Positions 1-34,821 of a stretch of 64,000 nt of DNA are shown here, one piece after another. Under the pieces are notes generated by a model. The model made no database searches and was not told the origin of the DNA. It saw only the letters and a program-made list of their open reading frames with translations. Numbering within the stretch: position 1 is the stretch's first letter; the number at the start of each line of letters is the position of its first letter. The DNA is from Raja brachyura (lineage: Eukaryota), in NCBI GenBank assembly GCA_963514005.1, contig OY740798.1, positions 51,894,001-51,958,000 on the forward strand, given 5' to 3'. The position numbers and the translations under genes were made by a program.

Positions 1-232
1 CCCTTGGCGATTCAGATAAGCTGGCTCAAGAAATCAAAGATTGGAGAACAGAAGATCCTGGACCACATTTGCACAGGATCTCCTGTTAAAAATGCGGATG
101 GAACCTACAATGTGTCGAGCCAAATGAGGCTACGTCCAACACTCCAGGACGATGGTAACACTTACGTGTGCTTAGTGAGACATAGATCACTTTATAAGGA
201 CACAGAGTTGACCACCCATCTGACTGTCAAAG
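1..232 (+). CDS. Exon (5'-truncated by window edge): membrane-proximal extracellular C1-set Ig domain
   Basis: PLAIQISW...DGTYNVSS...YVCLVRH; C-strand Trp, F-strand YxC, NVS sequon; donor AAAG|gtaagt after 232, phase 1. Confidence 0.92.
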
Positions 233-3200
233 GTAAGTTTAATTTTAGTTATAGAAGTAATGTGGAGACAGACCCTTCAGCCCAACTAATCCACACTGAC
301 CATCGATGGGCCAAATATGGGCAGGTTAGTCTGGCGTAGATGGTGCATCTTGGACAGTATGAATAAGTTGGGTTGAAAGGCATTTGTCTCCTACTGATTC
401 TAAAGAAATACTACCTTCCCACCCAAACCACCCACTCCCCTGGTACTTTCCCTTGCAACCGCAGGAAATGCCACACTTGTCATTTTACCTCCCCCGCGAC
501 TCCACCCAAGAGTCTCCACCTAAGCAGTCTTTCCAGGTTCACCTGCACCTCCTCCAACCTCATCTATTGCATCCACTGCTCTAGGTGTCAGCTGCTCTAC
601 ATCTGTGAGACCAAGTGCAGGTTTGGTGATCACTTCGCCCAACACCTCCGCTCGGTTCCTATTAACCAACCTGATCTCCCGGTGGCCCAGCACTTCAACT
701 TCCCCTCCCATTCCGAATCCGACCTTTCTGTCCTGAGCCTCCTCCATGGCCAGTATTTCCTCGTATTTCGCTTGGGCAATTTACTCCCCAGCAGTATGAA
801 CATTGACCTCCAAATTCAGGTAGTCCTTGCTTTCTCTCTCCTTCCCCTCCCCTTCCCAGCTCTCCCACAGCCTACTGTCTCCACATCTTCCTTTCTTCTT
901 CCCGCCGCCCCACCCCCACATCAGTCTGAAGAAGGGTCTCGACCCAAAACGTCACCTATTCCTTCGCTCCATAGATGCTGCCTCACCCACTGTGTTTCTC
1001 CAGCATTTTTGTCTACCTTTGATTTCTCCAGCATCTACAGTTCTTTCTTAAACAACCCTGCACACTAGGGGGCATTCATTTAAGTAAACCAACATCTGCA
1101 GCAAGGAAACGGGCCCTCTTGCCAAACCTCCCTATGCCAATCAAGATGCCCCATCTAAGCTAGTTCCACCTGCCCGTGTTTGGTCCATGTCCCTCTCAAC
1201 CTTTCTTATCCATGTACCTGTCCAAGTGTCTTTTAAATGTAGTTATTGCACCTGCCTCAACTTCCTCTTCTGGCAGCTCGTTCCATGTACGCACCACCTG
1301 TGTGGAAAAAAGTTGTCCCTCGGGTTCCCTTCAAATCTTTCCCTTACTTATGTCCCACGATTGTCTAATCATATGGTATTAACCTGAAATTCAAAGCTCC
1401 TCTACTGGTATACTGGGTCAGGCTACATCTCTTGAAAACATGGATAGGCGACGTTTCAAATCGGGACTCATCAGGTCGTGCATTTTAATGTGAGCAGTTT
1501 GGAGCACAAAATCTAGACGTTTGGAACAAAAACGAATTGTGGCGGGCATTCATTCTCAATAGAGACCAGACACACTAAGTTGTGAAGCAGCGTTACAAAG
1601 CAAATTCATCAAATACATTTGAGAGAGTTGTCTGAAGCAAAATATCCCGAATCCAATAGGGAATACTAGTTTCGCTTAGTCTAGTTCAGTTTAGAGATAC
1701 AGTGTGGAAACCGACCCTTCGGCCAGCTGAGTCCATGTCAACCATGTACATTAGTTCTCTGGTAGACAAAAATACTGGAGAAACTCAGCGGGTGAGGCAG
1801 CATCTATGGAGCGAAGGAAATAGGCAACGTTTCGGGCCGAAACCCTTCTTCAGACTGATGTGGTGGGGGGGGGGGGGGGGGTGCGTGCGGGAAGGGCGGG
1901 AAGAAGAAAGGAAGAGGTGGAGCCAGTGGGCTGAGGGAGAGCTGAGAAGGGGAGGAGACAGCAAGGGCTACCTGAAATGAGAGAGTCAATATTCATACCG
2001 CTGGGGTGCAAACTTTCCAAACAAAATATGAGGTGCTGCTCCTCCAACGTATGGTGGTCCTCACTCTGGCCATGGAGGAGGCCGTTCTCTGTTATCCCAG
2101 TTTTGCATCCTACACACAAGGGGGCATTTACAGAATCCAATTAACTCACAAACCCGCACGACTTTGACGTGTGGGAGGAAACCGAAGCACCCGGAATAAA
2201 CTCACGAGGTCACAGGGACAACCGCACAGTTAGCACCCGGAGTCAGGTTTAGTTCACTTGATTGTCATTTGTACTGAGGTACATTGAAAAGCTTTTCTTT
2301 GTCTCTGGCACTGTGAGGCAACAACTCTACTGCTGTGCTACGGTGCTGCCTATGTAGTTGTTTTGGAAATAGTCTTGTGCAATGAATATACGTATGTTTG
2401 CTAATTGTTATTAAAAACTTTTTTCTTACAGAGCCAGAAATCGTTGTACCAGGGGGAATAATAATATGCTGTGTTATTGGTAGTATACTGCTGTGTTCCT
2501 TGATCATGATCGTTGGATTTTTAATGTATCTAAAGATTTTTAGAAAAGGTAAAGTATCCTTCCCTGAACATTCAAAACCGTTTTGCCTAAGATCGTTTTC
2601 TGTGTTTGATCTGGTATGGTATAGAATGCTTGACATTGCATCAGACACGACATTGAGTATAAGAGGCAGGAAGTCATGTTGCAGCTTTATAGGACTTTAG
2701 TTAGGCCATATTTGGAGTATTGCATGCAGTTATGCTCGCTACTTTACAGGAAGGATGTGGAGGCATGGGGAGAGGTTTACCACAATGCTGCCTGGGTTAG
2801 AAGGTATTAAATATTGGACAAACTTTGATTATTTTCTCTAGAGTGCGGAAAAGGCTAAGGAAAGATCTGATACCAATTGTAAAATTATGCGAAGCATAGA
2901 TAATCAGAACTTTATCCCCAGGGTGTAAATGTCAAAGACCAGAGGGCATAACATAAGATGAGAGGGGCAAAGTTTTATGGAGATATGGACAACAATTTTT
3001 TTTACACAGAAAAAAAGTGTGTTTGGGGTTGCCTGGAACATCCTGCCAGGGGTGGTGGTGGAGGCAGAGCAGATTAGTTTATCTTGGCATCATGTTCGGC
3101 ATGAGCATTGTGGGCCGAAGGGCCTGTTCCTGTGCTGTACTCTGTTCAATGTTCTATATTTCATGTATTTATTCACTACATTACCTCGACTGAATGTGAA

Positions 3201-6200
3201 CTGTCAGATAATTTTAGCTGATCTCCTGGAAAACATTAGTTAGATAGATAGAGTGGACGTGGAGAGAATGTTTCCAGTAGTGGGAGAGTCCAGGACCAGA
3301 GACCAAAGGATGTTCCTTTAGAATGGAGATGAGGAAGAATTTCTTTAACCAGAGGGGGGTGAATCTGTGGAATTAATTGCCACAGGCAGTTGTGGAGGCC
3401 GTATCATTGGGTATTTTTAAAATAAATTGATAGGTTTAATCTGCAATTTGAGAAGAAGAACGTTAAATCGGAAATATCAGTGATGCAGTTGAACAAAGGG
3501 GACTATGAAGGCATGAGAGGGGAGCTGGCCAATGTAGACTGGAAAGGGATCCTAGCAGGAATGACGGTGGAACAGCAATGGCAGGAATTTCTGGGCATAA
3601 GCCGGAAGACGCAGGATCATTTCATTCCAAAAAGGAACAAAGGAACAGTAGGAGGCAACTGTGGCTGACAAGAGAAGTTAGGGATAGAATAAAACTAAGA
3701 GAAAAGATGTATAACACAGCACAGATTAGCGAGAAGTCAGAGAATTGGGAAACTTTCATAGGACAACAGAAGGAAACAAAACGGGCAATACGGGCTGAAA
3801 AGATGAAGTACGAGGGGAAGCTGGCCAGGAATATAAAGAAAGACAGTAAAAGCTTCTTTAGATATGTTAAGGGAAAAAGAGTAGCAATGTCAAATGTGGG
3901 TCCCTTGAAGGCAGACAGGGGTGAAATTATTATGGGCAACAAGGAAATGGCAGAGGTTGAATAGGTACTTCGGATCTGTCTTCACTAAGGAAGACACAAA
4001 CAATCTCGCAAATGTACTGGAGGACAGAGGATCTAAGGAGGTAGAGGAACTGAAAGAAATTTTCATTAGGCGAGAAATAGTATTGGGTAGGCTAATAGGC
4101 TGAAGGAAGATAAATCCCCTGGGCCTGATGGTCTGCATCCCAGGGTCCTCAGTGAGGTGGCTCCAGAAATAGTGGACGCATTGGTGATCATTTTCCAATG
4201 TTCAATAGATTCAGGATCAGTTCCTGTGGATTGGAGGATAGCTTATATTATCCCACTTTTCAAGAAAGAAGCGAGAGAGAAAACGGGGAATTACAGACCA
4301 GTTGGCCTGACTTCGGTGGTGGGAAAGATGCTGGAGTCAATTATTAAAGAGGTAATAATGTGGCATTTGGATAGCAGTAAAAGGATTAGACCAAGTCAAC
4401 ATGGATTTATGAAAAGGAAATCATGCTTGACTAATCTTCTGGAATTTTTTGAGGATGTGACAAGTAAAATGGATGAAGGGGTGCCAGTGAATGTAGTGTA
4501 TCTAGACTTTCAGAAAGCCTTTGATAAGGTCCCGCACGGGAGACTGGTGACTAAAATTAGAGCACATGGTATTGGGGGTAGGGTGTTGAAATGGATAGAA
4601 AATTGGTTGGCAGACCGGAAGCAAAGAGTAGGAGTGAACGGGTCCTTTTCAGAATGGCAGGCAGTGGCGAGTGGAGTGCCGCAAGGCTCGGTGTTGGGGC
4701 CGCTACTGTTTACCATATATATTAATGATTTGGAAGAGGGAATTAGGAGCAACACTAGCAAGTTTGCGGATGACACAAAGCTGGGTGGCAGTGTGAACTG
4801 TGAAGAGGATGTTAGGAGGTTGCAGGGTGACAGGTTGAGTGAGTAGGCAGATGCGTGGCAGATGCAATATAATATAGATAAATGTGAGGTTATCCAGTTG
4901 CGGCAAAAACAAGGGAGCAGATTATTATCACAATGGGGTTAGGTTAGGTAAGGGGGAGGTACAGCGAGACCTGGGTGTCCTCGTACACCAGTCACTGAAA
5001 GTTGGCGTGCAGGTACAGTAGGCAGTGAAGAAAGCTAATGGAATGTTGGCATTCATAACAAGAGGATTTCAGTATAGGAGTAAAGAGGTTCTTCTGCAGT
5101 TGTATAGGGCTCTGGTGAGACCACATCAGGAGTATTGTGTACAGTTTTGGTCTCCTAATTTGAGGAAGGACATCCTTGTGATTGAGGCAGTGCAGAATAG
5201 GTTCACGAGATTGATCCCTGGGATGGTGGGACTATCATATGAGGATAGATTGAAAAGACTAGGCTTGTATTCACTTGAGTCTAGAAGGATGAGGGGCAAT
5301 CTTATAGAAACATATAAAATTATAAAAGGACTGGACAAGCTAGATGCAGGAATAATGTTCCCAATGTTGGGCGAGTCCAGAACCAGCGGCCACAGTCTTA
5401 GAATAAATGGGAGGTCATTTAAGACTGAGGTGAGAAAAAACCTTTTCACCCAGAGAGTTGTGAATTTATGGAATTCCCTGCCACAGCGGGCAGTGGAGGC
5501 CAAATCACTGGATGGTTTTAAGAGAGAGTTAGAGCTCTAGGGGCTAGTGAAGTCAAAGGATATGGGGAGAAGGTAGGCATGGGTTATTGATAGCGGACGA
5601 TCAGCCATGATCACAATGAGTGGCGGCGCTGGCTCGAAGGGCCAAATGGCTTCCTCCTGCACCTATTTTCTATGTTTCTATGTTTTAAAGAATTGATAGG
5701 TTTGTGATTCCTTTCTAAAGGTAGCTACGTCCTTTTATTGTGAGGCTGTTCCCTCTGGTCCTAGACTCTCCCACTTGTGGAAGCATCCGCTCCATATCCA
5801 TTGATTTCTATTAACGTCTAACTTTCATAGGATGACCTTTCTTTGTTCTTGAGTTACACCAGTATTTTTCACCTCTGCATTTCCAGTTCTTTTGTTCTTG
5901 CATCCTGATTTCGATTTATTTTTTCATATCCTTGGCTTTATTTTTGATCTCTGATTCTCATGTTATTTCTAAATGTGGAGATACCTAAAATGTAATGAGA
6001 TATTGAGCCAGGTGTTCTTACATCCATATTTATTACAGTGGATGTTTTATGTAGATGGGTGATGAATTTGTTCTGATACTTTTAAAGTGACATAAACCTC
6101 TTCCAAAAGAAGAATAACATCAACATTTTTTTTCTAGTACCTCCTAAAGTGTCTGAAATCACCAAACCACCACACATGATACATTTGGAAGAAACTGTTC

Positions 6201-9200
6201 TGACTTGTCATATATCAGGATATAAGCCTGCAAACATTTCGCTTTGTTGTTTTCTACAAAGAGAGGGGGAAAATCAAAGTAAGATTTTCCAATGGAGCTC
6301 TGCACCTGGCCACTCGCAAGCACCTGAAGCTATTGAGCAGCAAAGACTTATTTGCAACGGCGACCCTGTGAAGGAGTCTTTCCACATTGAGATGACAACT
6401 GTTACACACGATGGCTGCTCCAGTGCGAAATGCAAAATTATATTCATCCCTGATATTGATAAAGATGACGGAACTGTCCTCTCTCTTCACGTTTCACATA
6501 GCACTCTTGGAGAGCCTATTACTAAATCCATCCAATTGGAAGTTGAAGGAAGTAAGTATACAGTGTGGCACACGGTGCAGCATATAGAGCTGCTGCCTCA
6601 CAGTGGCAGAGGCTTGGAGTTTGACCTCGGGTGCTGTCTGTGTGGAGTTTGCACATTCTCCTTGTGACTGCTGGGTTTTCTCCGGGTGCTCCGGTTTCAT
6701 CCCATATTCCAAAGATGTGCGGGTTTGTAGGTTAATTGGCCTCTGTAAATTGCCCCTAGTGTGTAGGGAGTGGTAGAAAAAGTGGGATAACGTAGAACTA
6801 GTGTGAACAGGTGATTGATAGTTGGTGCGCATTTGTTTGGTTGAAGGGCCTGTTTGCATGCTGTATTTCTAAAGTAGACGAAATCATGTCAAGAAAACAA
6901 TTATCTTTATTTGTTTATAAAAGTGTCTTACCAAATCAATACCTCAGGTAAAATGTAGTTTAGCGTAAAGATACAGCATGGAAACAGGCTCTTCCACTCA
7001 CCAAGTCGGCAGCAACCATCAATCACCTGTTCTACGTTATTCCACTTCCTCACCTATTCCCTACACGCTGAGGGCATTAACCTACAAACCCACGCGCCTT
7101 TAGGATGTGGTGGGAAACCCACGCGGTCATAGGGAAAATGTGCAAACTCCACACAGACAGCACCGGAGGTCAGGATCAAACCTGGTCCGGCTCTATGAGA
7201 CAGCAGCTCTACCAGCTACGCCACTGTGCCACCCAAAATTACTCTGTTTTAACTATATACTTTTAAATTAGCCGTCCTCTCTGTAATTACATCTCACGAA
7301 TAATCCGAAATACTATGCAGTAAATGTTACTAGTGTGTGCGGGGTCTGTTAAAATGGCTGGATTGCAGTTACATCTCAACTGCACAAAATAAAACTCAGC
7401 AAGTTTTATACAATACACTGTAAATTCTAAAACCATTAAATCTTCTCTCCTTTTTCCTTTCTTAAATAAAAACAGTTGCACCAAAGATGACTAATATTCT
7501 AGCTCCGCCTCACATTATTCATGAAGAGGTGATTGCTTTGTCTTGTCCTATTGACGGATTTAAACCAAGACCACTGGCCATCACTTGGTACCAAAAACCC
7601 GACAAAGCAAAAGAAAACATGGGATTGAAAGAAATTGTGAGAACTGTGTATGGAAGCGAAGATGTTATTGTTGGTGGGGAAAAGGATCTGCCTAAATATT
7701 CCCACTCTCTAAATGAGTTGACCAATGAAGACAATACGTATAGTGTCACTAGTTTCCTAAAATTTACACCAACGATTCTCGAAGACCATGAAACGGTGTA
7801 TGTTTGTGAAGTTGAACATCCAGCTACGGCTTCAAAAACACAACATCGGGTCAAACTTGACATAAAAGGTACAGTCAGAATTTCTCTATTCCTATTATGG
7901 ATTGTAAGATACAATGGAAGCAGGCGCTTCCCCTCAGCACGTACTCCTGCAGTCTGGAATGTGCCAGTTGCCAACTTGCCCTGATGGCCATGTGCTGGGA
8001 GAGCACATGGCCATCAAGTTTCGGGCAGACCAAAGAATGTCTTTTACCAAATCTATATGCAGATTAGACCAGGCATCAGGATAATAATCCAGGTGAATGT
8101 GGCTTAATATCAACACGTTTTAATTACCCTTTCAAACTAGGTGGTAGCGTGGACAGTGAAGATGATTATCAAAAATCACATTTGGCTTTTGATCATCTGT
8201 GCAAGTGGGCTGTGCAATAGCTAATGGAGTTTAATGGAGATAAATACAGTTTGCATGTTCTCCTTGTGACTGTATGGGTTTTCTCTGGGTGCTCCAGTCT
8301 CCCACACTTCAAAGACCTACAGATGTGCAGGTTAGTTGGCTTTTGTAAATTGTAAATTGCCCCGTGTGTAGGATCGTGGTAGAGTTTGGGGAGATCGCTC
8401 GTCGGCATGGTGGCTGAAGGGCCTGTTTCCACTCTGGACCTCCAATGTCTGAAGTGCAAGGTGCTGCATATTTGGGAAATCAAACCAAGGCAGAACCTTC
8501 ACAATGAATGGTGGGGCCCTGGGAAATGTTGTAGAACAGGGATCTAGGAGTGCAGGTGGGTTGTTCCCTGAAAGTGGTGTCAAAGGTAGATAGGGTGGTA
8601 AAGAAGGATTTTGGTACATTGGCCTTTATTTGTCATGGTATTGAGGATAGAAGTTGAGATGTTATGTTACAGTTGTACAAGATGTTGGTGAGACAACATT
8701 TAGTGTACCGTGTTCGGTTTTGGTCACCCTGCTATAGGAAGGATGTCATTAAGCTGCTTAGGGTGAAGAGAAGATTTATGTGGATGTTGCTGGGAATTGA
8801 GGGCCTGAGCTATCGGGAGAGTTTGAGCAGGTTAGAAAACTTTTTTGGAGCGCAGGAGGCTGAAGGCTGATCTTATAGAGGCATCTTTTACACAGGAGAG
8901 GGGAATCAACAAACCGGAGGACATAGGTTTAAAGTGAGAGGGGCAAGATTTAGTAGAAATCTGAGAGGAAACGTTTTCGATCAGAAGGTGTTGGGTGTAT
9001 GGAAAGAGTGCCGGAGGAGGTAGTTGAGACAGGTACTATAAAAACATTTCAAAGACTTGAACAGATACATGGATAGGAAAGGTTTAAAGGGATACAAGCC
9101 AAACGTGTATAAATGGGATGAGCTGAGATGGGGCATCTTGGTTGTGGACAAGCTTGGCTGAAGGGCCTATTTCCGTGTTATATGACTCGGAACAAAAATC

Positions 9201-12200
9201 CCTGCAGAATGTCTGAACCTTTCACAGCTTTTTCCTTCCCTTTCTCTTCAGCAATCCCAGAATGTGAAGACATTAAGTTGGCGCCGGAAATCCCAATTGC
9301 AGAAGAATTTGCTGAATCAACCTGCAGGATACATTCCTTCTTCCCAAAGAACATTGAAGTTATTTGGAAAATGGATAACAAACTAATGCAGGAAACTAAA
9401 GCTGAAACTGAACCCACCTTAGGAACTGATGGTCGTTATAGCTTCACAGATCATCTGAAGTTCATCCCTGCGAGAGAAGACCTTGGAAAGATATTAACCT
9501 GCAAATTCCAGCATGAAAGTATCATAGGCACAAAAAGAACTGCCTGTAAATTGGATAAACTGAGTAAGGAAGTGTTTTATTTCTTTTTTATTTTGAAAGA
9601 TTTCATTGTTGAACATTGTTGTCCATTTTTGTTCATTTACCTAGAGTGATAGAGCATGGAAACGGGCCCTTGGGCTCAACTTGCCCACACCAGCCAACAT
9701 ATCCCAGCTACACTAGTGCCCCCTGCTTGCATTTGGTCCATATCCCTCCAAACCTGCCCTAACCATGTACCTGTTTAACTGTTTCTTAAACATTGGGACA
9801 GTCCCAGCCTCAACTACCTCCTCTGGCATCTTGTTCCACACACCCACCACCCTTTGTTGAAAAAGTAACCCCTCAGATTCCTATTAATTCTTTTCCCCTT
9901 CACCTTAAACCTATGTCTTCTGGTCCTCGATTCACTTAATCTGGGCAAGAGACTCTGTGCATCTACCTGATCTATTCCTCTCATGATTTTATACACCTCA
10001 ATAAGATCACACGTCACTGCCCCTGCACTTCAAGGTCCAAGTTATATAAAGGAGGATAGTAAAATAAGAATATAAAGGAGGATAGTAAAAGCTTCTTTAG
10101 GTATGTGAGAGGAAAAAATTAGTTAAGACCAAAGTTGGACCCTTAAAGACTGAAAAGGGTGAATTTATTATGGGGAACAAGGAAATGGCAGATGAGTTGA
10201 ACAGGTACTTTGGATCCGTCTTCACTAAGGAAGACACAAACAATCTTCCGGATATACTAGTGGCCAGAGGATCTGGGATGACGGAGGAACTGAAGGAAAT
10301 CCACATTAGGCAGGAAATGGTGTTGGATACTGATGGGACTGAAGGCTGATAAATCCCCAGGGCCTGATGGTCTGCATCCCAGGGTACTGCAGGAAGTGGC
10401 TCTAGAAATCATGGTTGCATTGGTGATAATTTTCCAATGTTCTATAGATTCAGGATCAGTTCCTGTGGATTGGAGGGTAGCTAATGTTATCCCACTTTTT
10501 AAGAAAGGCGGGAGAGGGAAAACAGGGAATTATAGACCAGTTAGCCTGACATCGGTGGTGGGGAAGATACTGGAGTCAATTATAAAAGATGAAATAGCGG
10601 CACATTTGGATCGCAGTAACAGAATCGGTTCGAGTCAGCATGGATTTACGAAGGGGAAATCATGCTTGACTAATGTTCTGAGGATTTTTTGAGGATGTAA
10701 CTCGGAAAATGGACAAAGGAGAGCCAGTGGATGTAGGGTACCTGGACTTTCAGAAAGCATTTGATAAGGTCCCAGATAGGAGATTAGTAGGTAAAATTAG
10801 GGCACATGGTATTGGGGGTAGAGTGCTGACATGGATAGAAAATTGCTTGGCAGACAGGAAACAAAGAGTAGGGATTAACGGGTCCCTTTCAGAATGGCAG
10901 GGAGTGATTAGTGGGGTGCCGCAACGTTCAGTGCTGGGACCGCAGCTGTTTACAATATACATCAATGATTTAGATGAAGGGATTCAAAGTAACATTAGCA
11001 ATGAGTAGATGACGCAAAGCTGGGTGGCAGTGTGAAGTATGAGTAGGATGCTATGAGAATGCAGGGCGGCTTGGGCAGGTTGGGTGAGAGGGCAAATGCA
11101 TATCAGATGCAGTTTATTGTGGATAAATGTGAGGTTATCCACTTTTATAGCAAAAACAGGAAGGCAGATTACTATCTAAATGGTATCAAGTTGGGAGAAG
11201 GGGAAGTACAACGGGATATGGGGGTCCTTGTTCATCAGTTTATGAAAGTAAGCATGCAGGTACAGCAGGCAGTGAAGAAAGGAAATTGCATGTTGGCCTT
11301 TATAACAAGAGGAATCGACTATAGGAGCAAAGAGGTTCCTTCTGCAGTTGTATAGGGCCCCAGTGCGACCACACCTGGAGTATTGTGTGCAGTTTTGTTC
11401 CCCTAATTTGAGGAAGGACATTCTTGCTATTGAGGGAGCCCAGTGTAGGTCTATAAGGTTAATTCTCGGGATGGCGGTGGACTGTCATATGCTGAGAGAA
11501 TGGAGCAGCTGGGCTTGTACACTCTGGAATTTAGAAGGATGAGAGGGGATCTTATTGAAACATAAGATTATTAAGGGTTTGGACATGCTTAAGGCAGGAA
11601 ACATGTTCCCGATGTTGGGGGAGTCCATACCAGGGGCCACAGTGACGATTAAACACTTTTTCTCACAGAGAGTTGTGAGTGTGTGGAATTCTCTGCCTCA
11701 GAGGGCAGTGGATACTTTGGATAAGTTCTCTGGATACGGGGGATAGGTGCTCGGGATACTTTCAAGAGAGAGCTGGCTAGGGCTCTTATAGATAGCGGAG
11801 TCAGGGGATATGGGGAGAAGGCGGGAACGGGGTACTGATTGGGGATGATCAGTCATGATCACATTAAATGGCGGGTTACACAAAAAGCTGGAGAAACTCA
11901 GCGGGTGCAGCAGCATCTAAGGAGCGAAGGAGATAGGCGACGTTTCGGGTCGAGATCCTTCTTCAGACTTTTCCAAATTTGTAAGCAGTCTGAAGAAGGG
12001 TCTCGACCCGAAACGTCGCCTATCTCCTTCGCTCCTTAGATGCTGCTGCACCCGCTGAGTTTCTCCAGCTTTTTGTGTAACCGTCGATTCTCCAGCATCT
12101 GCAGTTCCTTCTTTAACACATTAAATGGCGGTGCTGGCTCGAAGGGCCGAATGGCCTACTCCTGCACCTATTGTCTATTGTCTGAGTTCCATTCTTAAAT

Positions 12201-15200
12201 TGCAAGAATTAGTGACAGACACAAATTGCTGGAGGAACTCAGTGGGGTGGCCACACCTCTGGAGAAAATTGATAGGTGATGTTTTGGGTCGGGACCCATC
12301 TTCAGACCGTCCCGTAACTCCTCCCCATAACCCCTGACACCCGTACTAATTACCCCCGTCAATCTCCTCCTTAAAAATATCCATTGACTTAGGAATTAAT
12401 TGCCACAGCCTTTTGTGACTGACTAAATAAATGCTTCCTCACTGACCTCACTGACCCACTGACTAAATAAATGCTTCCTCACCTCCTTTGAAAAGATACA
12501 TTGTAGCGTGATGATAATCCCGAAATAAGGCGAGGAGCCAGGTGTTTCGGGAAGTATTTTATTTGCTGTCCTTCTCCTGACCAGATGAGTCTGCAAAAGA
12601 GAGATTGCGCCTAAACCCGTGCCCTTTATCCCTGTAGCTAAAGGCCGCCCCCGGACTCATCCATGCCCGTGCCGAGGGGTTCAATAGTGGAAATGGCCCG
12701 ACCCTTGGGGCCACCACAACGTCATTTTATTCTGAAACTGTGGTCTCTGGTCCGAGACTCTCCCACTAGTAGAAACATCCTCTCTACATTCACTCCATGT
12801 CTATTTTATGGCTCTTTGCTATAAACCAGCATCTGCATTTGCTTTTGTATTACATTCTATCCAAGAGTTAATGTTGTTTTTTTTGCAGTCTCTCCTCCGT
12901 TATTGGACGACATGAAAATTCAACCACAATATCCCAAACCAGGAGATTTGACAACATTCTTGTGCCATGCACGTGGCTTCTATCCAAAGGATGTTATGTT
13001 TATGTGGTTCAAAAATGAGAAGAGGATTGATGATAAAGAGATCACTTCTACTGACCCGGTGATCGATAAAAACACTGGCCTCTTCTGCTGTGAAAGTCGG
13101 TGGAAGTATATGATTTTACCTGATGATCATCAAATCGATTTCAAAGTTGAGGCTCTTCATTTTCAAACTTCTCATCGACCCGCTAAGGTCTTTCACAGCC
13201 TACTCCTTGGAGGTATGAGATATAAAGTCATACAGCCTGGAAACAGGCCCAGTTGCTCAACTTGCCCACACCGACCAACATGTCCCATCTACACTAGTAC
13301 CACCTGCTTACCTTTGGCTCATGTCTCTCTAAATCTGTCCTATCCAAGTACCTACCTAATTGTATACACCCACCACTCTTTGTGTGAGAAAGTTACCCCT
13401 CAGATTCCTATTAAACCTTTCCCCCATTTACCTATGAATCTATGTCCTCTGGTTCTCGATTCCCTTTCTCTGGGCAAGCGACTGTGAGTCTAACTGCTCG
13501 ATTCCTCTCATGATTTTGTCATGCATACATCATCTACTTTGTGGCTTGGACTAGTTCGGTTTGCCTGCTTTTTTCTTCTTCCTGTCTGAAGAAAGGCCCC
13601 AATTGTATATAATATATATATATACAAGGAGACATATATAAGGTCGACAGTCAGAACCTTATTCACCAGGGTGGAAATGCAAAGAATGCAATGAATAGCT
13701 ATGAATCGAGAGGTGGTAACTTTAACGGAGATGTGTGGATCAAGTTTCTTTAGACGGAGTTTGGTGGGTGTCTGAAATTAGCTGCTACGGGTGGTGGTGG
13801 AGGCAGAGACGATAGTGTTGTGTAAATTGCATTTAAATAGGCACATGGATATGCAGGGATTGGAGGGATAAGGTTCAAGTATCGGTAGATGAGATCAGTT
13901 TAGCTCGGCATCATGTTCGGCACAAACGTCGTGGGCCGAAGCTCCCTTTTCCGTGGTGTACTGTTCTATGTAACCTGAAAAATCTTCTGTCCATGTTGTC
14001 CAGAGATGCTGCCTGACCTACTGAGTTGCTCCAGCTCTTTGTGCTTTTACCGCAATAATTTTATCTGATGAGTTATCCTGGGCTTCTACGCAGGGAGGAG
14101 TGTAGATTTACTAGAATGTTGCCTGGGTTCCAGCAACTAAGTTACAGAGAAAGGTTGAACAAGTTAGGTCTTTATTCTTTGGAGCGCAGAAGGTTAAGGG
14201 GGGACTTGATTGAGGTCTTTAAAATGATGAAAGGGATAGACAAAGTTGACGTGGATAAGCTTTTCCCATTGAGGGTAGGGAAGATTCAAACAAGAGGGCA
14301 TGACATGAGAATTAAGGGATAGAAGTTTAGGGGTAACATGAGGGGGAACTTCTTTACTCAGAGAGTGGTGGCTGTGGAATGATCTTCCAGCAGAAGTGGT
14401 GGAGGCAGGATCGATTGTAACATTTAAAAGTAAAGTGGATAGGTATATGGACGGGAAGGGAATTGAGGGGTATGGTCTGAGTGCAGGTAGATGGGACTAG
14501 GGGAAAATAAATGGTCGGCACGGACTGGAAAGGCCGAGAAGGCCTGTTTCCGTGCTGTAATTGTTATATGGTTATATGGTTAATCAGATTATAGAAGGTC
14601 TTGAACACACAACGGACTGCAGATGCAGGTTTACAAAAAAAGACACTAAGTGCTGAAGTAACCCATTATTTCAGGCAGCATCTCTGGAGAGGGTTACACA
14701 AAAAGCTGGAGAAACTCAGCGGGTGCAGCAGCATCTAAGGAGCGAAGGAGTTAGGCGACGTTTCGGGTCGAGACCCTTCTTCATACCTCTGGAGAGCATG
14801 GGTAGGAGACCATTCTTCAGACTGATTGTTGGGGGGGAGAAAGCCAGAAAAAAGGGTGGGGAGGTGACAAAGCCTGGCGAGTGTTAGGTGGATACATGTG
14901 AGGGGAGGGGTTTGATTATCAGATGCAGTGGACAAAGGCTAGGGATGAAAAGGTGACAAAAGGGTGGCAAAAAAAGAGAGACGAGGAGTGAATGTTTTTT
15001 TTCCAATAACTTTATTATTTGAAGGGAAATTTAGTTAGGAAATGTGGCGACTCTTGTGTAGGCCATTCGGCTCATCGTCTAATAATGGCTGATCCCTCTC
15101 TCCATCTTAATCCCATTCTCCTGCCTTCTCCCCTTAACCCCAGGCAACCGTATTAATCAAGAACTAATCAAGTGTAATCTACTATTCTTACACTCTTGTC

Positions 15201-17657
15201 ATTAGGTTTGTTAGTGTTTATATATAGTAAGATTCTATTTGATTGTATGCAAAAGAAGAATTTCACTGTACTTAGCTATGTACTGGAGAGCATGGGATTC
15301 ATAACAAGAGGATTTCAGTACAGGAGTAAAGAGGTTCTTCTGCAGTTGTATAGGGCTCTGTTGAGACGACATCTGGAGTATTGTGTACAGTTTTGGTCTC
15401 CTAATTTGAGGAAGGACATCCTTGTGATTGAGGCAGTGCAGCGTAGGTTCACGAGATTGATCCCTGGGATGGCGGGACTGTCATATGAGGAAAGATTGAA
15501 AAGACTAGGCTTGTATTCACTGGAGTTTAGAAGGATGAGGGGATATCTTATAGAAAAATATAAAATTATAAAAGGACTGGACAAGCTAGATGCAGCAAAA
15601 ATGTTCCCAATGTTGAGCGACTGCAGAACCAGGGGCCACAGTCTTAGAATAAAGGGGAGGTCATTTAAGACTGAGGTGAGAAAAAACTTTTTCACCCAGA
15701 GATTTGTGAATTTATGGAATTCCCTACCACAGAGGGCACTGGAGGCCAGGTCACTGGATGGATTTAAGAGAGAGCTGGATAGAGCTCTAGGGGCTAGTGG
15801 TGTCAAGGGATATGGGGAGAAGGCAGGCACGGGTTATTGATAGGGGACGAATTGCCATGATCACAATGAATGGGTGCTGGCTCGAAGGGCTGAATGGCCT
15901 CCTCCTGCACCTATGTTCTATGTTTCTATGTACTTGTGACAATAAATTACTGGTCCACCATTGTTTTCTCCGGCACCCTTGGTTCCAGAGCCTTGCTGGA
16001 TCATCTGTTTTACTGGACCAACAGAGGTCACGGCCTCTGAGAGGAGTCTAGCGGTACCAGATCGGTCCACTAGGCCGCTGAGTGGCCGAGACACCCGGCT
16101 CGGAAGTTGGCTGTGGGAACAGATCTGCTGGCCACGGGGCAAATTCAACTCGCCGGTCGGCTGCCAGAGGTCCTGATGAGGCTGAGGTCGGTCGTTTCAC
16201 CAAGCCTTGGCTTCACATTTTTGGGGGGACTTCCCAGGGGTGGGTTGGGGGAGAGGGGGGGAGGATAACAAGTTCACTCTCCTAATTGTGTCTCAATTAA
16301 AGGCGTCGTAACACCAGTTGCTCAAAATCAATAAACTAAAATAAACGATAGTTTGAGTGCAATTGTTCTGGGAAAAGGCAGATTTGTTATGTTTTGTTTA
16401 CGGCAACTCCACTATAATAAAATTGAGCAATATCTAAACTGTTGTCTGTTTTATTTTTCCAAATAGGAATTCCAAAGCTTTCTGATATCATTCTTGAGCC
16501 AGAAACTCCATTCTATGGCCAGCCTCTAGTTCTTAAATGCAACGTGACCAATTTTGCTCAGAAAGGAATCTCCACCAATTGGCTAATGGACGATAAACCT
16601 ATTTTGAAAGGAGTCAGGAATACAGACCCCAAGGAGGAACAAGATGGATTTTATCAGTTGTGCTCCTGTCTGGAGCTGATACCCACAGCGTTACATTACA
16701 ACAAGAAACTTGTCTTTGAGGTGAAAAATGAAATTACACCTCAGGCTATTACCAAACACTTATATTTACCACTGCCAGGTAAGTGAAACTGGTAGAAAGC
16801 CTTAATAATTGTTAACAAGGATGGAATTGATCAGTCGGGTACTAAGGTTTTAAAAGAAAATTTTGGGTGGCACAAAGGGGACTTGCAGCACCGGAGACTC
16901 GGATTCGATCTGACCTCGGGTGCTATCTATGCAGAGTTTGCACGTTCTCCCCTTGACCGTGTGGGTTTCCTCCGGGTGCTCTGGTTTCCTCACACATCCC
17001 AAAGACCAGCAGGTTTGTAGGTTAATTGGCTTTGGTAAAATTGTAAATTGTCCCTTGTGTGTAGGTTAGTGCTAGTGAATGGGCTGATCGCTACTCAGTG
17101 GGCCGAAGGCCCTGTTTCCACTATGTATCGCCAAAGTCTAAAGTAAAAGTTAATTGACCTCTGTAAATTGTCCCCTGGTGTATAGGGAGTGGATGAGAAA
17201 ATGGGATAACATAGAACTAGTGTGAACATGTTAGCGATGGTCAGGGTGGATTCTCAGGGCCTAAGAGCGTGTTTCCTTGCTGTATCTCTGAACTAAACTA
17301 TCCACTGTCGAAAGTGAAACCATCTCAATGTGTGCATATTCTACTCTATTTTAAGGTAATTTCCCCACTGTGTCTGAAATCTACTGCAAAGAGGGATGCA
17401 CAGTGGCATCTTTCATGGTTTCGTTGACTGATTATGTACCTCAGGAAATTGAGGTGAAGTGGTTCAAAGGAGAACAACCCTATACAGGATCTGTCCATAA
17501 TGGTCTACCTCAGATTGCCACCACTGGCCTCTTCTCTTCAACAACAGAAATAGAATTTATTCCAGAACCATCTGATCATGACTTGGAAATCAGATGTGAG
17601 ATATTTCATCTGGAGACAAAGAAAAGGATTGAGCAAAAGTGCCGCTTACCATTTTGA
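1..17657 (+). CDS. ncr3lg1: Multi-exon B7-H6 (NCR3LG1)-like IgSF type I membrane protein, 5'-partial: C1 - TM - six C1-like Ig domains - stop. Exons 1-232, 2432-2548, 6138-6551, 7476-7868, 9252-9563, 12889-13212, 16467-16778, 17356-17657
   Basis: Eight exons with canonical splice sites, all phase 1. Internal exon lengths (117, 414, 393, 312, 324, 312 nt) are multiples of 3, so they join into one open frame ending at TGA 17655-17657. Pre-TM domain (DHICTGSPVKNADGTYNVSS..YVCLVRH.SL) resembles, from memory, the B7-H6 C1 domain. The symbol is a family-level assignment, not proven orthology. Confidence 0.8.
410..1050 (+). mobile_element. Penelope-like retroelement 3' fragment (GIY-YIG endonuclease + terminal repeat)
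   Basis: CNRRKCHTC...SSNLIYCIHCSRCQLLYICETK...RF..H..PVAQHF; terminal repeat ctgaagaagggtctcgaccc. Confidence 0.85.
1762..2080 (-). mobile_element. Penelope-like 3' fragment with hammerhead-like motif
   Basis: Same family as 410-1050 (LEEQHLIF..L.SL.PSGMNID); reverse complement reads ctgaagaagggtttcggcccgaaacgtt. Confidence 0.8.
2432..2548 (+). CDS. Exon: transmembrane segment
   Basis: Acceptor ttttcttacag|; encodes EPEIVVPGG-IIICCVIGSILLCSLIMIVGFLMYL-KIFRK; donor G|gtaaag; 117 nt, phase 1-1. Confidence 0.88.
3433..5682 (+). mobile_element. CR1-clade (HER1-like) LINE, 5'-truncated, disrupted ORF2
   Basis: [46 protein letters not shown] motifs; (ttctatgt)n tail. Confidence 0.92.
6138..6551 (+). 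CDS. Exon: post-TM Ig C1-like domain 1 (long C-D insertion)
   Basis: Acceptor tttttctag|; VPPKVSEI...LTCHISGYKP...DDGTVLSLHVSHSTL...LEVEG; donor A|gtaagt; F-strand Cys replaced by Leu, C-strand Trp replaced by Cys. Confidence 0.88.
6563..6875 (+). mobile_element. HE1-type tRNA-derived V-SINE
   Basis: A/B-box-like head, V-domain core ggtgctgtctgtgtggagtttgcac..ctccgggtgctccggtttc, LINE-derived tail gaagggcctgtt. Confidence 0.8.
6955..7233 (-). mobile_element. HE1-type V-SINE
   Basis: Reverse complement of the same head/core/tail. Confidence 0.75.
7476..7868 (+). CDS. Exon: post-TM Ig C1-like domain 2 (long C-D insertion)
   Basis: Pyrimidine tract then aaacag|; IAPKM...LSCPIDGFKPRPLAITW...DNTYSVTS...YVCEVEHPA; donor G|gtacag; both Cys present. 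Confidence 0.9.
8430..9185 (+). mobile_element. Old CR1 LINE 3' fragment
   Basis: Degenerate MLQLYK.LVR.HL.Y..FWSP; tail gaagggcct. Confidence 0.7.
9252..9563 (+). CDS. Exon: post-TM Ig C1-like domain 3
   Basis: Acceptor ttctcttcag|; TCRIHSFFPKNIEVIW...DGRYSFT...LTCKFQHES; donor A|gtaagg; both Cys present. Confidence 0.9.
11875..12116. mobile_element. 242-bp Penelope-derived palindromic element with 15-bp TSD
   Basis: TSD cacattaaatggcgg at 11860-11874 and 12117-12131; 96-bp inverted arms 11874-11969 and 11987-12082 (1 mismatch). Confidence 0.88.
11990..12017 (+). ncRNA. Minimal type I hammerhead ribozyme-like motif
   Basis: CTGAAGA-A-GGGTC-TC-GACCC-GAAA-CG-TC: CUGANGA and GAAA boxes, stem II, short palindromic stem III, UH site; stem I weak. 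Confidence 0.6.
12889..13212 (+). CDS. Exon: post-TM Ig C1-like domain 4
   Basis: Acceptor ttttttgcag|; FLCHARGFYPKDVMFMWFKN...TGLFCCES...FKVEALH; donor G|gtatga; F-strand Cys replaced by Val. Confidence 0.9.
14100..14580 (+). mobile_element. CR1 LINE 3' fragment
   Basis: RFTRMLPG..LSYRERL..LGLYSLERRRLRGDLIE; (gttatatg)n tail; same subfamily as 46700-47216. Confidence 0.85.
14692..14786 (-). mobile_element. 95-bp Penelope-derived unit with 10-bp TSD
   Basis: TSD ctctggagag at 14682-14691 and 14787-14796; sequence equals one arm of the 11875-12116 element. Confidence 0.82.
15292..15930 (+). mobile_element. CR1 LINE 3' fragment
   Basis: Near-copy of 5050-5682; (ttctatgt)n tail. Confidence 0.88.
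16467..16778 (+). CDS. Exon: post-TM Ig C1-like domain 5
   Basis: Acceptor tttttccaaatag|; LKCNVTNFAQKGISTNW...DGFYQLCSCL...LVFEVKN; donor G|gtaagt; F-strand Cys replaced by Phe. Confidence 0.88.
16866..17300 (+). mobile_element. HE1-type V-SINE (compound)
   Basis: B-box ggattcgatc, V core, two tails. Confidence 0.72.
17356..17657 (+). CDS. Exon: post-TM Ig C1-like domain 6, carries the stop codon
   Basis: Acceptor ctattttaag|; FMVSLTDYVPQEIEVKWFK...TGLFSSTT...IRCEIFH...LPF*; B-strand Cys replaced by Val; TGA is followed by G|gtaaat, a phase-1-position donor. Confidence 0.86.
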
Positions 17658-18503
17658 GGTAAATATGACTTAGTGCTTCCAAAGCATTGTTTCGACAAGG
17701 CTAGGTTTTAATATAGCTAGTTTCTTCCCAGCTGTTATCACGCAATTGAACCATCATCTCACCAACTAGATTGCGGCCCTGACCTCCCACCCAACTTTAT
17801 CTTGCACTAAATGTTGTACCCTGTAAATGTATACGTCGTGGGAGCAGAATTAGACCATTCGGCCCATTGAGTCTACTCCGTCATTCAATCATGGCTGTTG
17901 CATCTTTCACTCTCAACCCCATTCTCCTGCCTTTATCTGTTCACTTTGGGCAGTTTGATTTTACCATGTATAGTCTTTCCGCTGACTAGTCTTCTGCTGA
18001 CTGGATAGCATGCAACAAAAAACTTTTCACTGTACCTTGGTACATGTGGCAATAAACTAAACTAATCCATTGGATCATATTGCCCATTCCTGGCAAAATG
18101 TCATGTAATACAATGTGCTGGAGTGACTCAACGGGTCAGGCAGCATCTATGGAGAACGTGACGTTTTTGGTTGGACCCCTCCTTCAGACTGCTTGTGCTG
18201 GGGAATCTCATAAACTCCACTATTGTGTCGGAAGGAACTGAGGCTTATCGATTGTCGGTACCTGTACCTGGTTTACAGGTACCTGTAATACCTGTAAAGT
18301 CCACTATCGTATCTGCCTCCACCACCACCACTGGCAGCTTTCAAGACTCCACCATCCTCTGTATAAAAAAAATCTCACCCCGTACATCTCCTTTAAACTG
18401 GCTACTCGTGCTTTCAAGCTACGGCCTGTTATATTTGATATTTCCACCCTGGGAAAAAAGTTCTGACTACCCTAAATATCCTTCTCATAATTTTATATAC
18501 TTA

Positions 18504-32900: not shown

Positions 32901-34314
32901 AGAGATAGTACTAAAAATTTAATTTAAAAAAAAAAAGTATCTCATATTAAGAAATGGGACATATTCTGTTTACAGTTAAATATATCTTATCATAAGTTGC
33001 AGGCATACCGGATGTATTGGAGTTCCTGGCTACATTGCATTTTGACGAGCAGTTAAGATATAGTGCCATTTATAGTACTAGAAGTACTTTGTCCTCCTAC
33101 TTAGGGCAAGGGTCCGGACAACACTCTGTCGGATCTCATCTACTGTTGGCTGATTCATAGGAGGTATTTTAACAAAACCCTCCCAGACGTACATATTCAG
33201 AAATCTGGGATGTGACCATAGTTCTCACACTGCTTTGGCAATGGGCTCCAATTACATCTATGCCTTTCCGGAAGTTAACGCTCAAAGTGATCATGTTCAT
33301 GGTGCTAGTGGCAGCATTATGGGTCCAAATATTGCAAAAGTTATGACTGGACAGCATGCATTCTTCTGTAGATGATATTGTGCTTTATGCATATGATCTA
33401 ATCAAACAGAGCAGGTCAGGGATGGCTGGAACCAAAATAATCTTAAAATATACCCATTGATCTAAGACTATATGTAATTACACATCTGAGCTAATAATAT
33501 CATCAAGAGTCTCAGAGGCTCTGAAACAGCGATGGTCATCGGCCACATAAAACCTCATGCAAAGGTGTCAGTGTCAGTATTGCTAGATGACCGAAATAGG
33601 TTTGCATTTTGCTGGAGTAGACACTGATGTGTTTAAATCACTCCACCAGGACGGCATCAACGTACGCAGCAAAGGCGCAGGACGTGCCATTGGACCAAAT
33701 CTTCACCGCAGGATAGTCCAGTTAAGGAACCTTTTAGGGTTTATGACAAACCTGACCTCGCAATGCAAAGATTGGACAAGTTGTTTTTGGTTCTGTTTGA
33801 GTTCTCCTTTGTAATTTCCCCTGCGAAAGAGGGGTTATTACTGTTGTGAACATTTTTATTGTTTAAGACATTTATTGTATAAATTAAACAATGTTTGATA
33901 CATTATTTGGTTATCCTGTGTCAACCAAGGCAGTGTGTCGTAAGGAACTGCATCTACGGCATGAAATCACAGAGCTTTGAAATCATCACAGTCACTCACG
34001 TGACTCTGAAGTAAAATAGTAAGATTAAATGAGAACTTACTAGTTCAAAGTTTGATCCTTATTTTATGAGGAGTTACGGTGAGGGATTACGTGTCCTCTG
34101 CTCCCACCCTCATAATCTAAAGAATCATCTGGTAGTTCTAGTCTTCTAAAAGCCTTACTATGTTACTTCGGCTATTGGGTTTCTGTGTTTTCACACTTTG
34201 AAGTGTGACAAGCATGCGCTCTGGCGGGACTTCTTCACGTAATCCCTCATCGTAACTCCTCATAAAATAAGGATCAAACTTTGAACTGGTAAGTTCTCAT
34301 TTAATCTTACTATT
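29989..34314 (+). mobile_element. DIRS1-type tyrosine-recombinase retrotransposon: both termini present, decayed ORFs
   Basis: Perfect 36-bp ITR 30016-30051 / 34206-34241; ICR ~33990-34093 complementary to both termini; ATT core at both junctions; degenerate RT/RNaseH, methyltransferase-like and YR remnants homologous to the second DIRS. Confidence 0.9.
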
Positions 34315-34333
34315 AAAACTAAATTAAACTTAC

Positions 34334-34654
34334 CTTTGACAGTCAGATGGGTGGTCAACTCTGTGTCCTTATCAAGTGATCTATGTCTCACTAAGCAGAC
34401 GAAAGTGTTACCATCGTCCTGGAGTGTTGGACGTAGCCTCATATGGCTCGACACATTGTAGGTTCCATCCGCATTTTTAACAGGAGATCCTGTGCAAATG
34501 TGGTCTGGGATCTTCTGTTCTCCAATCTTTGATTTCTTGAGCCAGCTTATCTGGATCGCCAAGGGGTAAAACACTGTACTGTCACATTTCACCGATTTTT
34601 CCGTCCCATTCTCAATGGTGATAGCAGTTGTGGATAAACTCATTTGCGGTTCAG
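34334..34654 (-). CDS. Inverted paralogous C1-set Ig exon (copy of the exon at 1-232); may be an orphan/pseudo-exon
   Basis: Acceptor atctttacag|, open frame EPQMSLSTT...VKCDSTVFYPLAIQISW...FVCLVRH...LTVK, donor G|gtaagt; 7 differences in 232 nt versus the + copy; no companion exons found in the window. Confidence 0.82.
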
Positions 34655-34821
34655 CTGTAAAGATAATAATTAATGTTAGTCATACAGTGTGGAAACAGGC
34701 CCTTCGGCCCAATCTGCCACACGAGCCAGCATGTCCCATAGTCACATTGTCATTTAATATTAGTGAACATTTTAATTTTTTTTAAAAATCCGAATCAAGT
34801 AAGTGCACACATTGAAAAGTT

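What the first reader, a model, noticed from the sequence alone, without database searches (positions are those of the whole stretch)
6138..17657. Canonical disulfide cysteines lost only in post-TM domains
Seen: the pre-TM domain keeps both Cys (visible in full in the paralog: VKCD / FVCL). Post-TM domains 1, 4 and 5 replace the F-strand Cys with L, V and F, and domain 6 replaces the B-strand Cys with V. Domains 2 and 3 keep both. All frames and splice sites are intact, so this is not general decay. Inference: hydrophobic substitution is what is expected once an Ig fold works in the reducing cytosol, which supports the topology independently. Caveat: N-x-S/T sequons (NIS, NQS, NVT) still occur post-TM.
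Basis: partly seen in the sequence, partly recalled or inferred. Interest (0 to 1): 0.75.

Follow-up and report, generated by a model that had tools for sequence, protein, structure and literature searches.

The report
Antibody-type domains inside the cell
A cartilaginous-fish gene of the B7-H6 immune-ligand family carries six antibody-like domains after its membrane anchor, and the way they have lost their disulfide cysteines, shared with relatives from chimaeras to amphibians, fits domains that work inside the cell.

Summary
On the + strand lie a C1-like Ig exon (to 232), a 117-nt TM exon (2432-2548) and six phase-1 Ig exons (6138-17657). d1, d4 and d5 have L, V and F at the F-strand Cys. 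d6 has V at the B-strand Cys. d2 and d3 keep both.

The gene is a B7-H6 (NCR3LG1)-family member whose whole post-TM part is a chain of C1-set domains. The same layout occurs in named proteins of sawfish, sharks, chimaera, bichir, coelacanth, lungfish, amphibians, a snake and alligators.

The Cys losses are old and domain-specific. F-Cys is kept in 0 of 28 d1-type and 1 of 15 d4-type domains, and B-Cys in 3 of 18 d6-type domains. The pre-TM domain keeps them in 40-41 of 41. Both Cys are present in 191 of 361 post-TM domains, against 318 of 323 in multi-C1 control proteins with a C-terminal TM.

N-glycosylation sequons occur at the chance rate after the TM (257 observed, 234.9 expected). They are enriched before it (196 against 113.6).

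This supports a cytosolic location but does not prove it. The scan had already found this architecture at another locus of this genome (s1-881295).

The parts
1..232 (+). Pre-TM C1-like Ig exon of the B7-H6-like gene, cut by the window start. It keeps the F-strand Cys (YVC). Donor AAG|GTAAGT.
   Evidence: It is 75% identical to residues 176-252 of P0001.
2432..2548 (+). TM exon, 117 nt, phase 1-1. A hydrophobic segment is followed by the basic stretch KIFRK.
   Evidence: It is 62% identical to residues 251-302 of P0001.
6138..6551 (+). d1, membrane-proximal Ig domain. B-Cys is kept, F-Cys is L and the C-strand Trp is C. It has a long insertion between strands, and sequons NIS and NQS.
   Evidence: Pfam gave no hit for the ORF. 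The AF2 model has pLDDT 86.6 and pTM 0.79, with residues 63-77 disordered. Foldseek best matches include MHC class II beta chains, beta-2-microglobulin and SIRP-alpha.
7476..7868 (+). d2, C1-set domain. Both canonical Cys and the Trp are kept. This is the most conserved tail domain.
   Evidence: Pfam C1-set 38 bits..
9252..9563 (+). d3, C1-set domain. Both canonical Cys and the Trp are kept.
   Evidence: Pfam C1-set 44.6 bits..
12889..13212 (+). d4, C1-set domain. F-Cys is replaced by V.
   Evidence: Pfam C1-set 28.5 bits..
16467..16778 (+). d5, C1-set domain. F-Cys is replaced by F. Sequon NVT.
   Evidence: Pfam C1-set 43.1 bits..
17356..17657 (+). d6, C1-set domain. B-Cys is replaced by V. 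It ends at stop TGA 17655-17657, which is directly followed by GGTAAA.
   Evidence: Pfam C1-set 25.8 bits..
34335..34658 (-). Inverted paralogous copy of the pre-TM C1-like exon. It shows both canonical Cys (VKC, FVC) and sequons NGT and NVS.

Best explanation
The six exons are the tail of a B7-H6 (NCR3LG1)-family type I membrane protein. The layout is signal peptide and IgV (outside the window), an IgC1-like domain, one TM helix, then six C1-set Ig domains up to the stop.

In the TM-containing form the tail domains lie in the cytosol. There the B-F disulfide cannot be maintained and N-glycosylation does not occur.

Over more than 400 million years four of the six domain types replaced one canonical Cys by a hydrophobic core residue, d1 also lost the Trp, free extra cysteines accumulated, and sequons drifted to the chance level. 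The folds stayed under purifying selection.

Shown: the exon structure, the Cys and sequon pattern, its conservation in orthologues, and the contrast with control ectodomains. Inferred: the cytosolic location, from topology rules and these signatures. Also inferred: the function. I take the chain to be an intracellular scaffold or dimerisation and sensing module that couples the cell interior to the displayed NK-cell ligand, as the B30.2 domain does for butyrophilins. That analogy is from recalled knowledge.
For: Architecture. phmmer of d3 against 1.84 billion representatives gave 437 hits. In the top ones d3 sits at about residue 520-660, after V, C, TM, d1 and d2. 67 of the best 150 have a TM followed by at least 2 C1 domains. 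Named members include Pristis, Heterodontus, Callorhinchus, Latimeria, Protopterus, Erpetoichthys, Bombina, Lissotriton, Microcaecilia, Pantherophis and Alligator, several of them named NCR3LG1. The ectodomain of P0001 best matches solved B7-H6 (6yjp_C, E 8e-32), then CD276 (7e-20).

The window's exons are collinear with P0001 at 54-76% identity, and all junction codons agree.

A Callorhinchus entry (P0159, UniRef V9K7L7) differs from the genome model by 8 substitutions and no indel. It contains the TM and all tail domains in one frame.

Topology. Mean net charge is +2.5 in the 15 aa after the TM and -0.28 before it. No second hydrophobic segment was found in P0001 and most other members.

Cysteines. 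Both canonical Cys are present in 191 of 361 post-TM domains, 75 of 87 pre-TM C1 domains and 318 of 323 control domains. With controls of at least 7 domains the figure is 291 of 293. Lost Cys are replaced by hydrophobic or aromatic residues in 228 of 238 cases. Non-canonical Cys per domain are 1.92 post-TM, 0.66 pre-TM and 0.43 in controls.

Sequons. Observed over expected is 1.09 post-TM, 1.73 pre-TM and 1.57 in controls. The pre-TM ratio exceeds the post-TM ratio in 46 of 61 proteins. No conserved sequon column exists after the TM.

Fold. AF2 of P0001 gives pLDDT of about 85-93 in all six tail domains. Window d1 gives pLDDT 86.6.
Against: d2 and d3 keep both canonical Cys (35 and 34 of 36; 31 and 32 of 33). 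The surviving partner Cys is also kept: d4 B 15 of 15, d5 B 21 of 23, d6 F 16 of 18. A purely disulfide-free life does not obviously require this.

The TM exon is symmetric (117 nt), so skipping it stays in frame. Isoforms lacking exactly the TM segment are annotated in Bombina, Rana and Microcaecilia. In those isoforms the chain would pass through the secretory pathway.

All counts use representatives that share ancestry, so the p-values overstate independence. The Cys-parity test could not discriminate: 120 of 234 post-TM domains have an even Cys count, against 189 of 336 in controls.

I know of no precedent for C1-set domains in the cytosol (recalled knowledge).
Confidence: 0.65

Rival explanations
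1. The tail domains do their work outside the cytosol. A TM-skipped splice form gives a secreted V-C-d1...d6 chain, the TM form is a separate membrane isoform, and the Cys losses are simply tolerated by stable Ig folds.
For: The TM exon is 117 nt in phase 1-1. TM-less isoforms that differ by exactly the 34-37 aa TM segment are annotated in Bombina, Rana and Microcaecilia. A partial Scyliorhinus model (P0025) also joins C directly to d1. d2 and d3 keep both Cys in about 95% of representatives.
Against: Sequons after the TM are at chance and none is positionally conserved, unlike the pre-TM part and control ectodomains. 47% of tail domains lack the pair, against 1.5% of control ectodomain C1 domains. 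Tail domains carry four times more non-canonical Cys than controls. The TM is present in 46 core representatives and absent in 3. The TM exon itself is conserved as a hydrophobic segment with a basic C-flank.
Confidence: 0.2
2. The canonical B-F disulfide was replaced by other disulfides (for example B strand to E strand in d1). The domains would then still be oxidised, and the pattern would say nothing about topology.
For: In d1-type domains, Cys is frequent at profile column 24 (20 of 28) and at E-strand column 66 (19 of 28). The window's d1, d4 and d5 each carry Cys in the E strand.
Against: Columns 24 and 66 show no association: 13 both, 7 and 6 single, 2 neither, where independence predicts about 13.6 both. 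The d4 E-strand Cys of the window is absent from Pristis and Heterodontus. The other extra Cys columns do not co-occur either (d4 columns 9 and 34: 3/3/3/6; d6 columns 79 and 98: 1/5/5/7).
Confidence: 0.07
3. The six exons are decaying remnants, or belong to a separate gene that gene models have fused to the B7-H6-like gene.
For: The introns are full of retroelement ORFs. Pfam does not recognise d1. The stop codon abuts a donor-like GT.
Against: No frame is broken and all splice sites are present. The order and junction residues match the sawfish protein. Tail domains are as conserved as the ectodomain across 24 family members. One independent Callorhinchus sequence has everything in a single frame. 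AF2 models are confident.
Confidence: 0.03

Closest known systems
B7-H6 / NCR3LG1 (human, solved ectodomains 3pv6, 4zso, 6yjp)
   Same: An IgV-IgC ectodomain followed by one TM. The sawfish orthologue's ectodomain matches these chains best (E 8e-32 to 2e-31). Several non-mammalian members carry this name in NCBI.
   Different: The post-TM part here is a chain of six C1-set Ig domains (up to eight in the core-family proteins read). The human tail is described as gag-like, without Ig domains (recalled, not checked here).
Butyrophilins (BTN3A1 and relatives)
   Same: A B7-related V-C ectodomain, one TM, and a folded intracellular domain that senses the cell interior (recalled knowledge). This is the functional analogy I propose.
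   Different: Their intracellular domain is B30.2/SPRY, not Ig. No sequence relation of the tails was tested or expected.
UrIg2 and other multi-C1 chains with a C-terminal TM (PDB 9dmx; Sci Adv 2025, PMC12227049, passages read)
   Same: Long chains of C1-set domains encoded by phase-1 exons in cartilaginous fish. They appear among the hits of d3.
   Different: All their C1 domains lie before the TM. The paper states that each domain has the canonical disulfide and Trp. My controls of this class keep both Cys in 318 of 323 domains.
Intracellular Ig domains of titin, obscurin and similar muscle proteins
   Same: An Ig fold that works in the cytosol without the B-F disulfide (recalled knowledge).
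   Different: Those are I-set domains of soluble cytoskeletal proteins. Here Pfam's best family is C1-set, and the chain hangs on a membrane ligand.

Membership tests
B7-H6 / NCR3LG1 (B7 family) | IgV plus IgC ectodomain, most similar to B7-H6 among solved proteins | tested here: met
   The P0001 ectodomain matches NCR3LG1 chains at E 8e-32 and next CD276 at 7e-20. The window holds only part of the C exon, which is 75% identical to P0001. The V exon is not in the window.
B7-H6 / NCR3LG1 (B7 family) | Type I single-pass membrane protein | tested here: met
   There is one hydrophobic exon with a basic C-flank. The signal peptide was seen only as N-terminal hydrophobic segments of orthologues.
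B7-H6 / NCR3LG1 (B7 family) | Binds an NKp30-type receptor | not testable with these tools
   This needs a binding assay.
Pfam C1-set (PF07654) | Score above the gathering threshold (21 bits) | tested here: met
   d2 to d6 score 38, 44.6, 28.5, 43.1 and 25.8 bits. The d1 ORF gave no Pfam hit (not met). Its AF2 model matches C1-type domains, namely MHC class II beta chains, beta-2-microglobulin and SIRP-alpha.
Pfam C1-set (PF07654) | Canonical B-F cysteine pair packed on the C-strand Trp | tested here: not met
   Met in d2 and d3 only. d1 lacks the F-Cys and the Trp, d4 and d5 lack the F-Cys, and d6 lacks the B-Cys.
UrIg2-like multi-C1 chains | All C1 domains lie before a C-terminal TM | tested here: not met
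   Here the TM exon precedes the six domains, and no hydrophobic exon follows d6 up to 22000.
Cytosolic I-set Ig chains (titin type) | I-set profile is the best match, and the protein has no signal peptide or TM | tested here: not met
   C1-set is the best Pfam family for P0001 and P0159. A TM is present.

The most novel reading that the evidence does not exclude
C1-set (antibody constant-type) domains, so far known only outside the cell, form a conserved cytosolic module of B7-H6-family ligands from chimaeras to reptiles. The chain would couple the state of the cell interior to the display or clustering of an NK-cell ligand. The two domains that keep both cysteines (d2 and d3) may act as redox-sensitive elements.
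Probability: 0.5. Interest if true: 0.85.

Novelty: new variant of a known kind. Interest (0 to 1): 0.7.

Why it matters
If the tail is cytosolic, the antibody constant-domain fold has a second, intracellular life. That life would have been kept for the whole history of jawed vertebrates and then lost in mammals. It would change how the origin of B7-H6 and its odd mammalian tail is read. It would give a natural set of disulfide-free C1 domains, of interest for intrabody design. It would also suggest an inside-out signalling route for an NK-cell ligand. The Cys and sequon signatures make the topology question directly testable with one tagged cDNA.

Tried and rejected
Alternative B-E disulfide in d1. 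Rejected, because the two Cys columns are not associated.

Cys-count parity as a test for disulfide pairing. Uninformative, because the controls are only 56% even.

More exons after d6. tblastn with Callorhinchus, Latimeria and Narcine proteins found no remnant downstream. A hydropathy scan found no second TM.

Copies of d1-d6 or of the TM exon near the inverted paralog exon. None found.

Literature. Seven full-text searches found no description of Ig domains in a B7-H6 tail. The two most relevant papers are not held (Flajnik et al. 2012, PMC3709836; Ohta and Flajnik 2015, PMC4594805). 'Not in print' therefore rests on those searches only. Supplements were not opened.

dN/dS. Not computed, because it needs orthologue DNA.
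Full report
WHAT IS THERE

The window is a repeat-rich vertebrate locus. On the + strand it holds the following:
- the 3' part of a C1-like Ig exon (1-232)
- a 117-nt exon encoding a hydrophobic segment followed by KIFRK (2432-2548)
- six Ig exons: d1 6138-6551, d2 7476-7868, d3 9252-9563, d4 12889-13212, d5 16467-16778, d6 17356-17657

Every exon has an AG acceptor. Every exon except the last has a GT donor. All are in phase 1 and none has an internal stop.

Pfam calls d2 to d6 C1-set above threshold (38, 44.6, 28.5, 43.1 and 25.8 bits against a cut-off of 21). It does not recognise d1.

An AF2 model of the d1 exon, made with an alignment of relatives, is confident (pLDDT 86.6, pTM 0.79). Only an insertion at residues 63-77 is disordered. 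Foldseek matches it to Ig domains, mostly of C1 type: MHC class II beta chains, beta-2-microglobulin and SIRP-alpha.

Exons were handled apart.

THE OBSERVATION

| Domain | B-strand position | F-strand position |
|---|---|---|
| paralog pre-TM exon | C | C |
| d1 | C | L |
| d2 | C | C |
| d3 | C | C |
| d4 | C | V |
| d5 | C | F |
| d6 | V | C |

d1 also has C instead of the C-strand Trp. The sequons NIS, NQS and NVT are there.

The pre-TM exon of the gene itself is cut by the window start and shows only its F-strand Cys. The complete copy is the inverted paralog exon at 34335-34658 on the minus strand.

WHAT THE GENE IS

phmmer with d3 alone against 1.84 billion representatives gave 437 hits at E up to 0.001. 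The best are long proteins in which d3 sits at about residue 520-660.

Reading twelve of them shows one layout: signal peptide, IgV, IgC, TM, then six to eight Ig domains. The junction after the TM is conserved (basic residues, then VPPK).

The sawfish protein P0001 (XP_051885227.1, 977 aa) has exactly the six tail domains of the window and ends at the same residue. The window's exons are collinear with it:

| Exon | Identity to P0001 |
|---|---|
| C | 75% |
| TM | 62% |
| d1 | 62% |
| d2 | 63% |
| d3 | 66% |
| d4 | about 54% (aligned stretch runs past the exon end) |
| d5 | 69% |
| d6 | 67% |

The seven split codons at the window's junctions give the residues found in P0001.

Named members come from Heterodontus, Callorhinchus, Narcine, Pristiophorus, Scyliorhinus, Erpetoichthys, Latimeria, Protopterus, several frogs, salamanders, a caecilian, a snake and alligators. 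Several are named 'natural cytotoxicity triggering receptor 3 ligand 1' by NCBI.

The ectodomain of P0001 matches solved B7-H6 best (E 8e-32). CD276 follows (7e-20), then tapasin-related protein (2e-14). d2 and d3 match Ig constant domains and SIRP C1 domains.

So this is a B7-H6-family gene with a tail made of C1-set domains.

IS THE CYS PATTERN MORE THAN A LOCAL ODDITY?

I classed the best 150 representatives by a simple hydropathy rule:
- 67 have one TM followed by at least two C1 domains and more than 200 residues.
- 33 have their TM within the last 80 residues, after all their C1 domains. These are the controls.
- 50 fit neither class.

Leaving out domains with a gap at either position, both canonical Cys are present as follows:

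| Set | Both Cys present |
|---|---|
| post-TM domains | 191 of 361 |
| pre-TM C1 domains of the same proteins | 75 of 87 |
| control domains | 318 of 323 |
| controls with at least seven domains | 291 of 293 |

The lost Cys are replaced by L, V, I, F, M, A, Y or W in 228 of 238 cases.

I assigned domains of the 46 core members to the window's domain types. This required a local alignment score of at least 60 and a margin of at least 15, so part of the domains were dropped; the counts say how many. The result is domain-specific:

| Domain type | n used of n assigned | B-Cys | F-Cys | Trp |
|---|---|---|---|---|
| pre-TM C | 41 of 46 | 40 | 41 | 41 |
| d1 | 28 of 35 | 20 | 0 | 4 |
| d2 | 36 of 46 | 35 | 34 | 36 |
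| d3 | 33 of 47 | 31 | 32 | 33 |
| d4 | 15 of 27 | 15 | 1 | 15 |
| d5 | 23 of 37 | 21 | 5 | 23 |
| d6 | 18 of 31 | 3 | 16 | 18 |

The losses are old and are shared by cartilaginous and bony vertebrates. They are not private to this genome.

SEQUONS

The table compares sequon counts with a composition-based expectation. The mid-TM rows use the 61 of 67 mid-TM proteins whose TM starts after residue 150.

| Region | Observed | Expected | Ratio |
|---|---|---|---|
| before the TM | 196 | 113.6 | 1.73 |
| after the TM | 257 | 234.9 | 1.09 |
| core subfamily, after the TM | 150 | 149.5 | 1.00 |
| core subfamily, before the TM | 132 | 78.3 | 1.69 |
| control ectodomains | 483 | 307.5 | 1.57 |

The pre-TM ratio exceeds the post-TM ratio in 46 of 61 proteins.

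In the alignment of 24 full-length members, two pre-TM columns carry a sequon in 11 and 13 sequences. No post-TM column does so in more than 3 (same result on the profile).

OTHER SIGNATURES

Mean net charge is +2.5 in the 15 residues after the TM and -0.28 before it. This is the positive-inside pattern of a stop-transfer anchor.

Tail domains carry 1.92 non-canonical Cys per domain, against 0.66 in pre-TM domains and 0.43 in controls. These extra Cys are at unconserved positions.

Across 24 members the tail domains are as conserved as the ectodomain. Mean pairwise identity is 0.27 to 0.35 for d1-d6, against 0.32 for V and 0.37 for C.

AF2 of P0001 gives pLDDT of about 85-93 in all six tail domains, with or without the Cys pair.

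This is purifying selection on folded domains, not decay.

WHAT SPEAKS AGAINST, OR STAYS OPEN

1. d2 and d3 keep both Cys almost everywhere, and the surviving partner Cys of d4, d5 and d6 is kept too. I have no tested explanation for this. Core packing against the Trp is my guess.

2. The TM exon can be skipped in frame. Isoforms lacking exactly the TM segment are annotated in Bombina (34 aa), Rana (37 aa) and Microcaecilia (37 aa). A partial Scyliorhinus model also lacks it. That such NCBI isoforms rest on transcript evidence is my recollection, not a call.

3. The only transcript-like evidence for TM plus tail in one molecule is the Callorhinchus entry V9K7L7 (P0159). It differs from the genome model by 8 substitutions and no indel. 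That it derives from cDNA is recalled, not shown by a call.

4. For this species I have no RNA evidence. I left these places out of all later searches and did not chase the gene in read or contig collections. For that reason dN/dS was not computed either.

5. All counts are over related sequences, so the Fisher and sign-test p-values are not phylogeny-corrected.

MECHANISM

Shown: the exon structure, family membership of the ectodomain, the order TM then six C1 domains, the Cys and sequon signatures, and their conservation.

Inferred with about 0.65 confidence: in the TM-containing form the chain is cytosolic.

Inferred with low confidence: it serves as an intracellular scaffold or dimerising and sensing module for an NK-cell ligand, by analogy with the butyrophilin B30.2 domain (recalled).

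A nearly invariant extra Cys in the pre-TM C domain (38 of 41) hints at a covalent dimer. That would place two tail chains side by side.

NOVELTY

Seven full-text searches found no description.

I read passages of PMC12227049, which describes UrIg2: a chain of nine to eleven C1 domains before a C-terminal TM, each with the canonical disulfide. I also read passages of PMC10751288, and in PMC11599192 a reference-list entry only. None mentions Ig domains behind a TM.

Flajnik et al. 2012 and Ohta and Flajnik 2015 are not held, and supplements are closed. An earlier mention there cannot be excluded.

The scan itself had found the same architecture at another locus of this genome. Its follow-up also found no description (s1-881295).

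VERDICT

Noticed in passing
window 17655-17665: The stop codon TGA of d6 is followed at once by GGTAAA, a donor-like site in the phase of all other exons. The sawfish protein ends at the same residue, while chimaera, coelacanth, lungfish and amphibian members go on with one to three more domains. No remnant of these lies downstream in the window. This looks like a lineage-specific truncation of the tail.
   Followed up: partly
window 34307-34565 (minus strand) against 1-260: An inverted copy of the pre-TM C exon, 95.8% identical in DNA over 260 nt. The similarity ends right after the exon. No V, TM or tail exon copies were found near it, so it seems a lone exon copy or a converted one.
   Followed up: partly
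pre-TM C domain, profile column 50 (ICTG motif; window about 61-72 and paralog exon): A third Cys in the pre-TM C domain is present in 38 of 41 core members. An unpaired extracellular Cys kept this well suggests an interchain disulfide, that is, a covalent dimer.
   Followed up: no
P0005, P0014, P0057, P0061, P0065, P0074 (frog proteins, not in the window): A second subfamily, in frogs, has V plus two C1 domains before the TM and up to 14 domains after it. Domains lacking both Cys (L...V) recur between domains that keep the pair. Some models of this type show no TM.
   Followed up: partly
window 6138-6551 (d1), residues 63-77 of the domain: d1 carries a long insertion between strands, predicted as disordered (pLDDT under 50). 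It varies in length among members, and in the sawfish model it is residues 347-370.
   Followed up: partly
window 17356-17480 (d6, N-terminal part): The A-B region of d6 is four residues shorter than in the sawfish protein and holds two extra Cys.
   Followed up: no
window 3480-5540, 10170-11750, 15196-15840 and others: The introns hold several non-LTR retroelement fragments with reverse-transcriptase-like ORFs, repeated elsewhere in the window at 70-89% identity.
   Followed up: no
window 55744-55884: A run of 141 N (gap or masked stretch). Left untouched.
   Followed up: no
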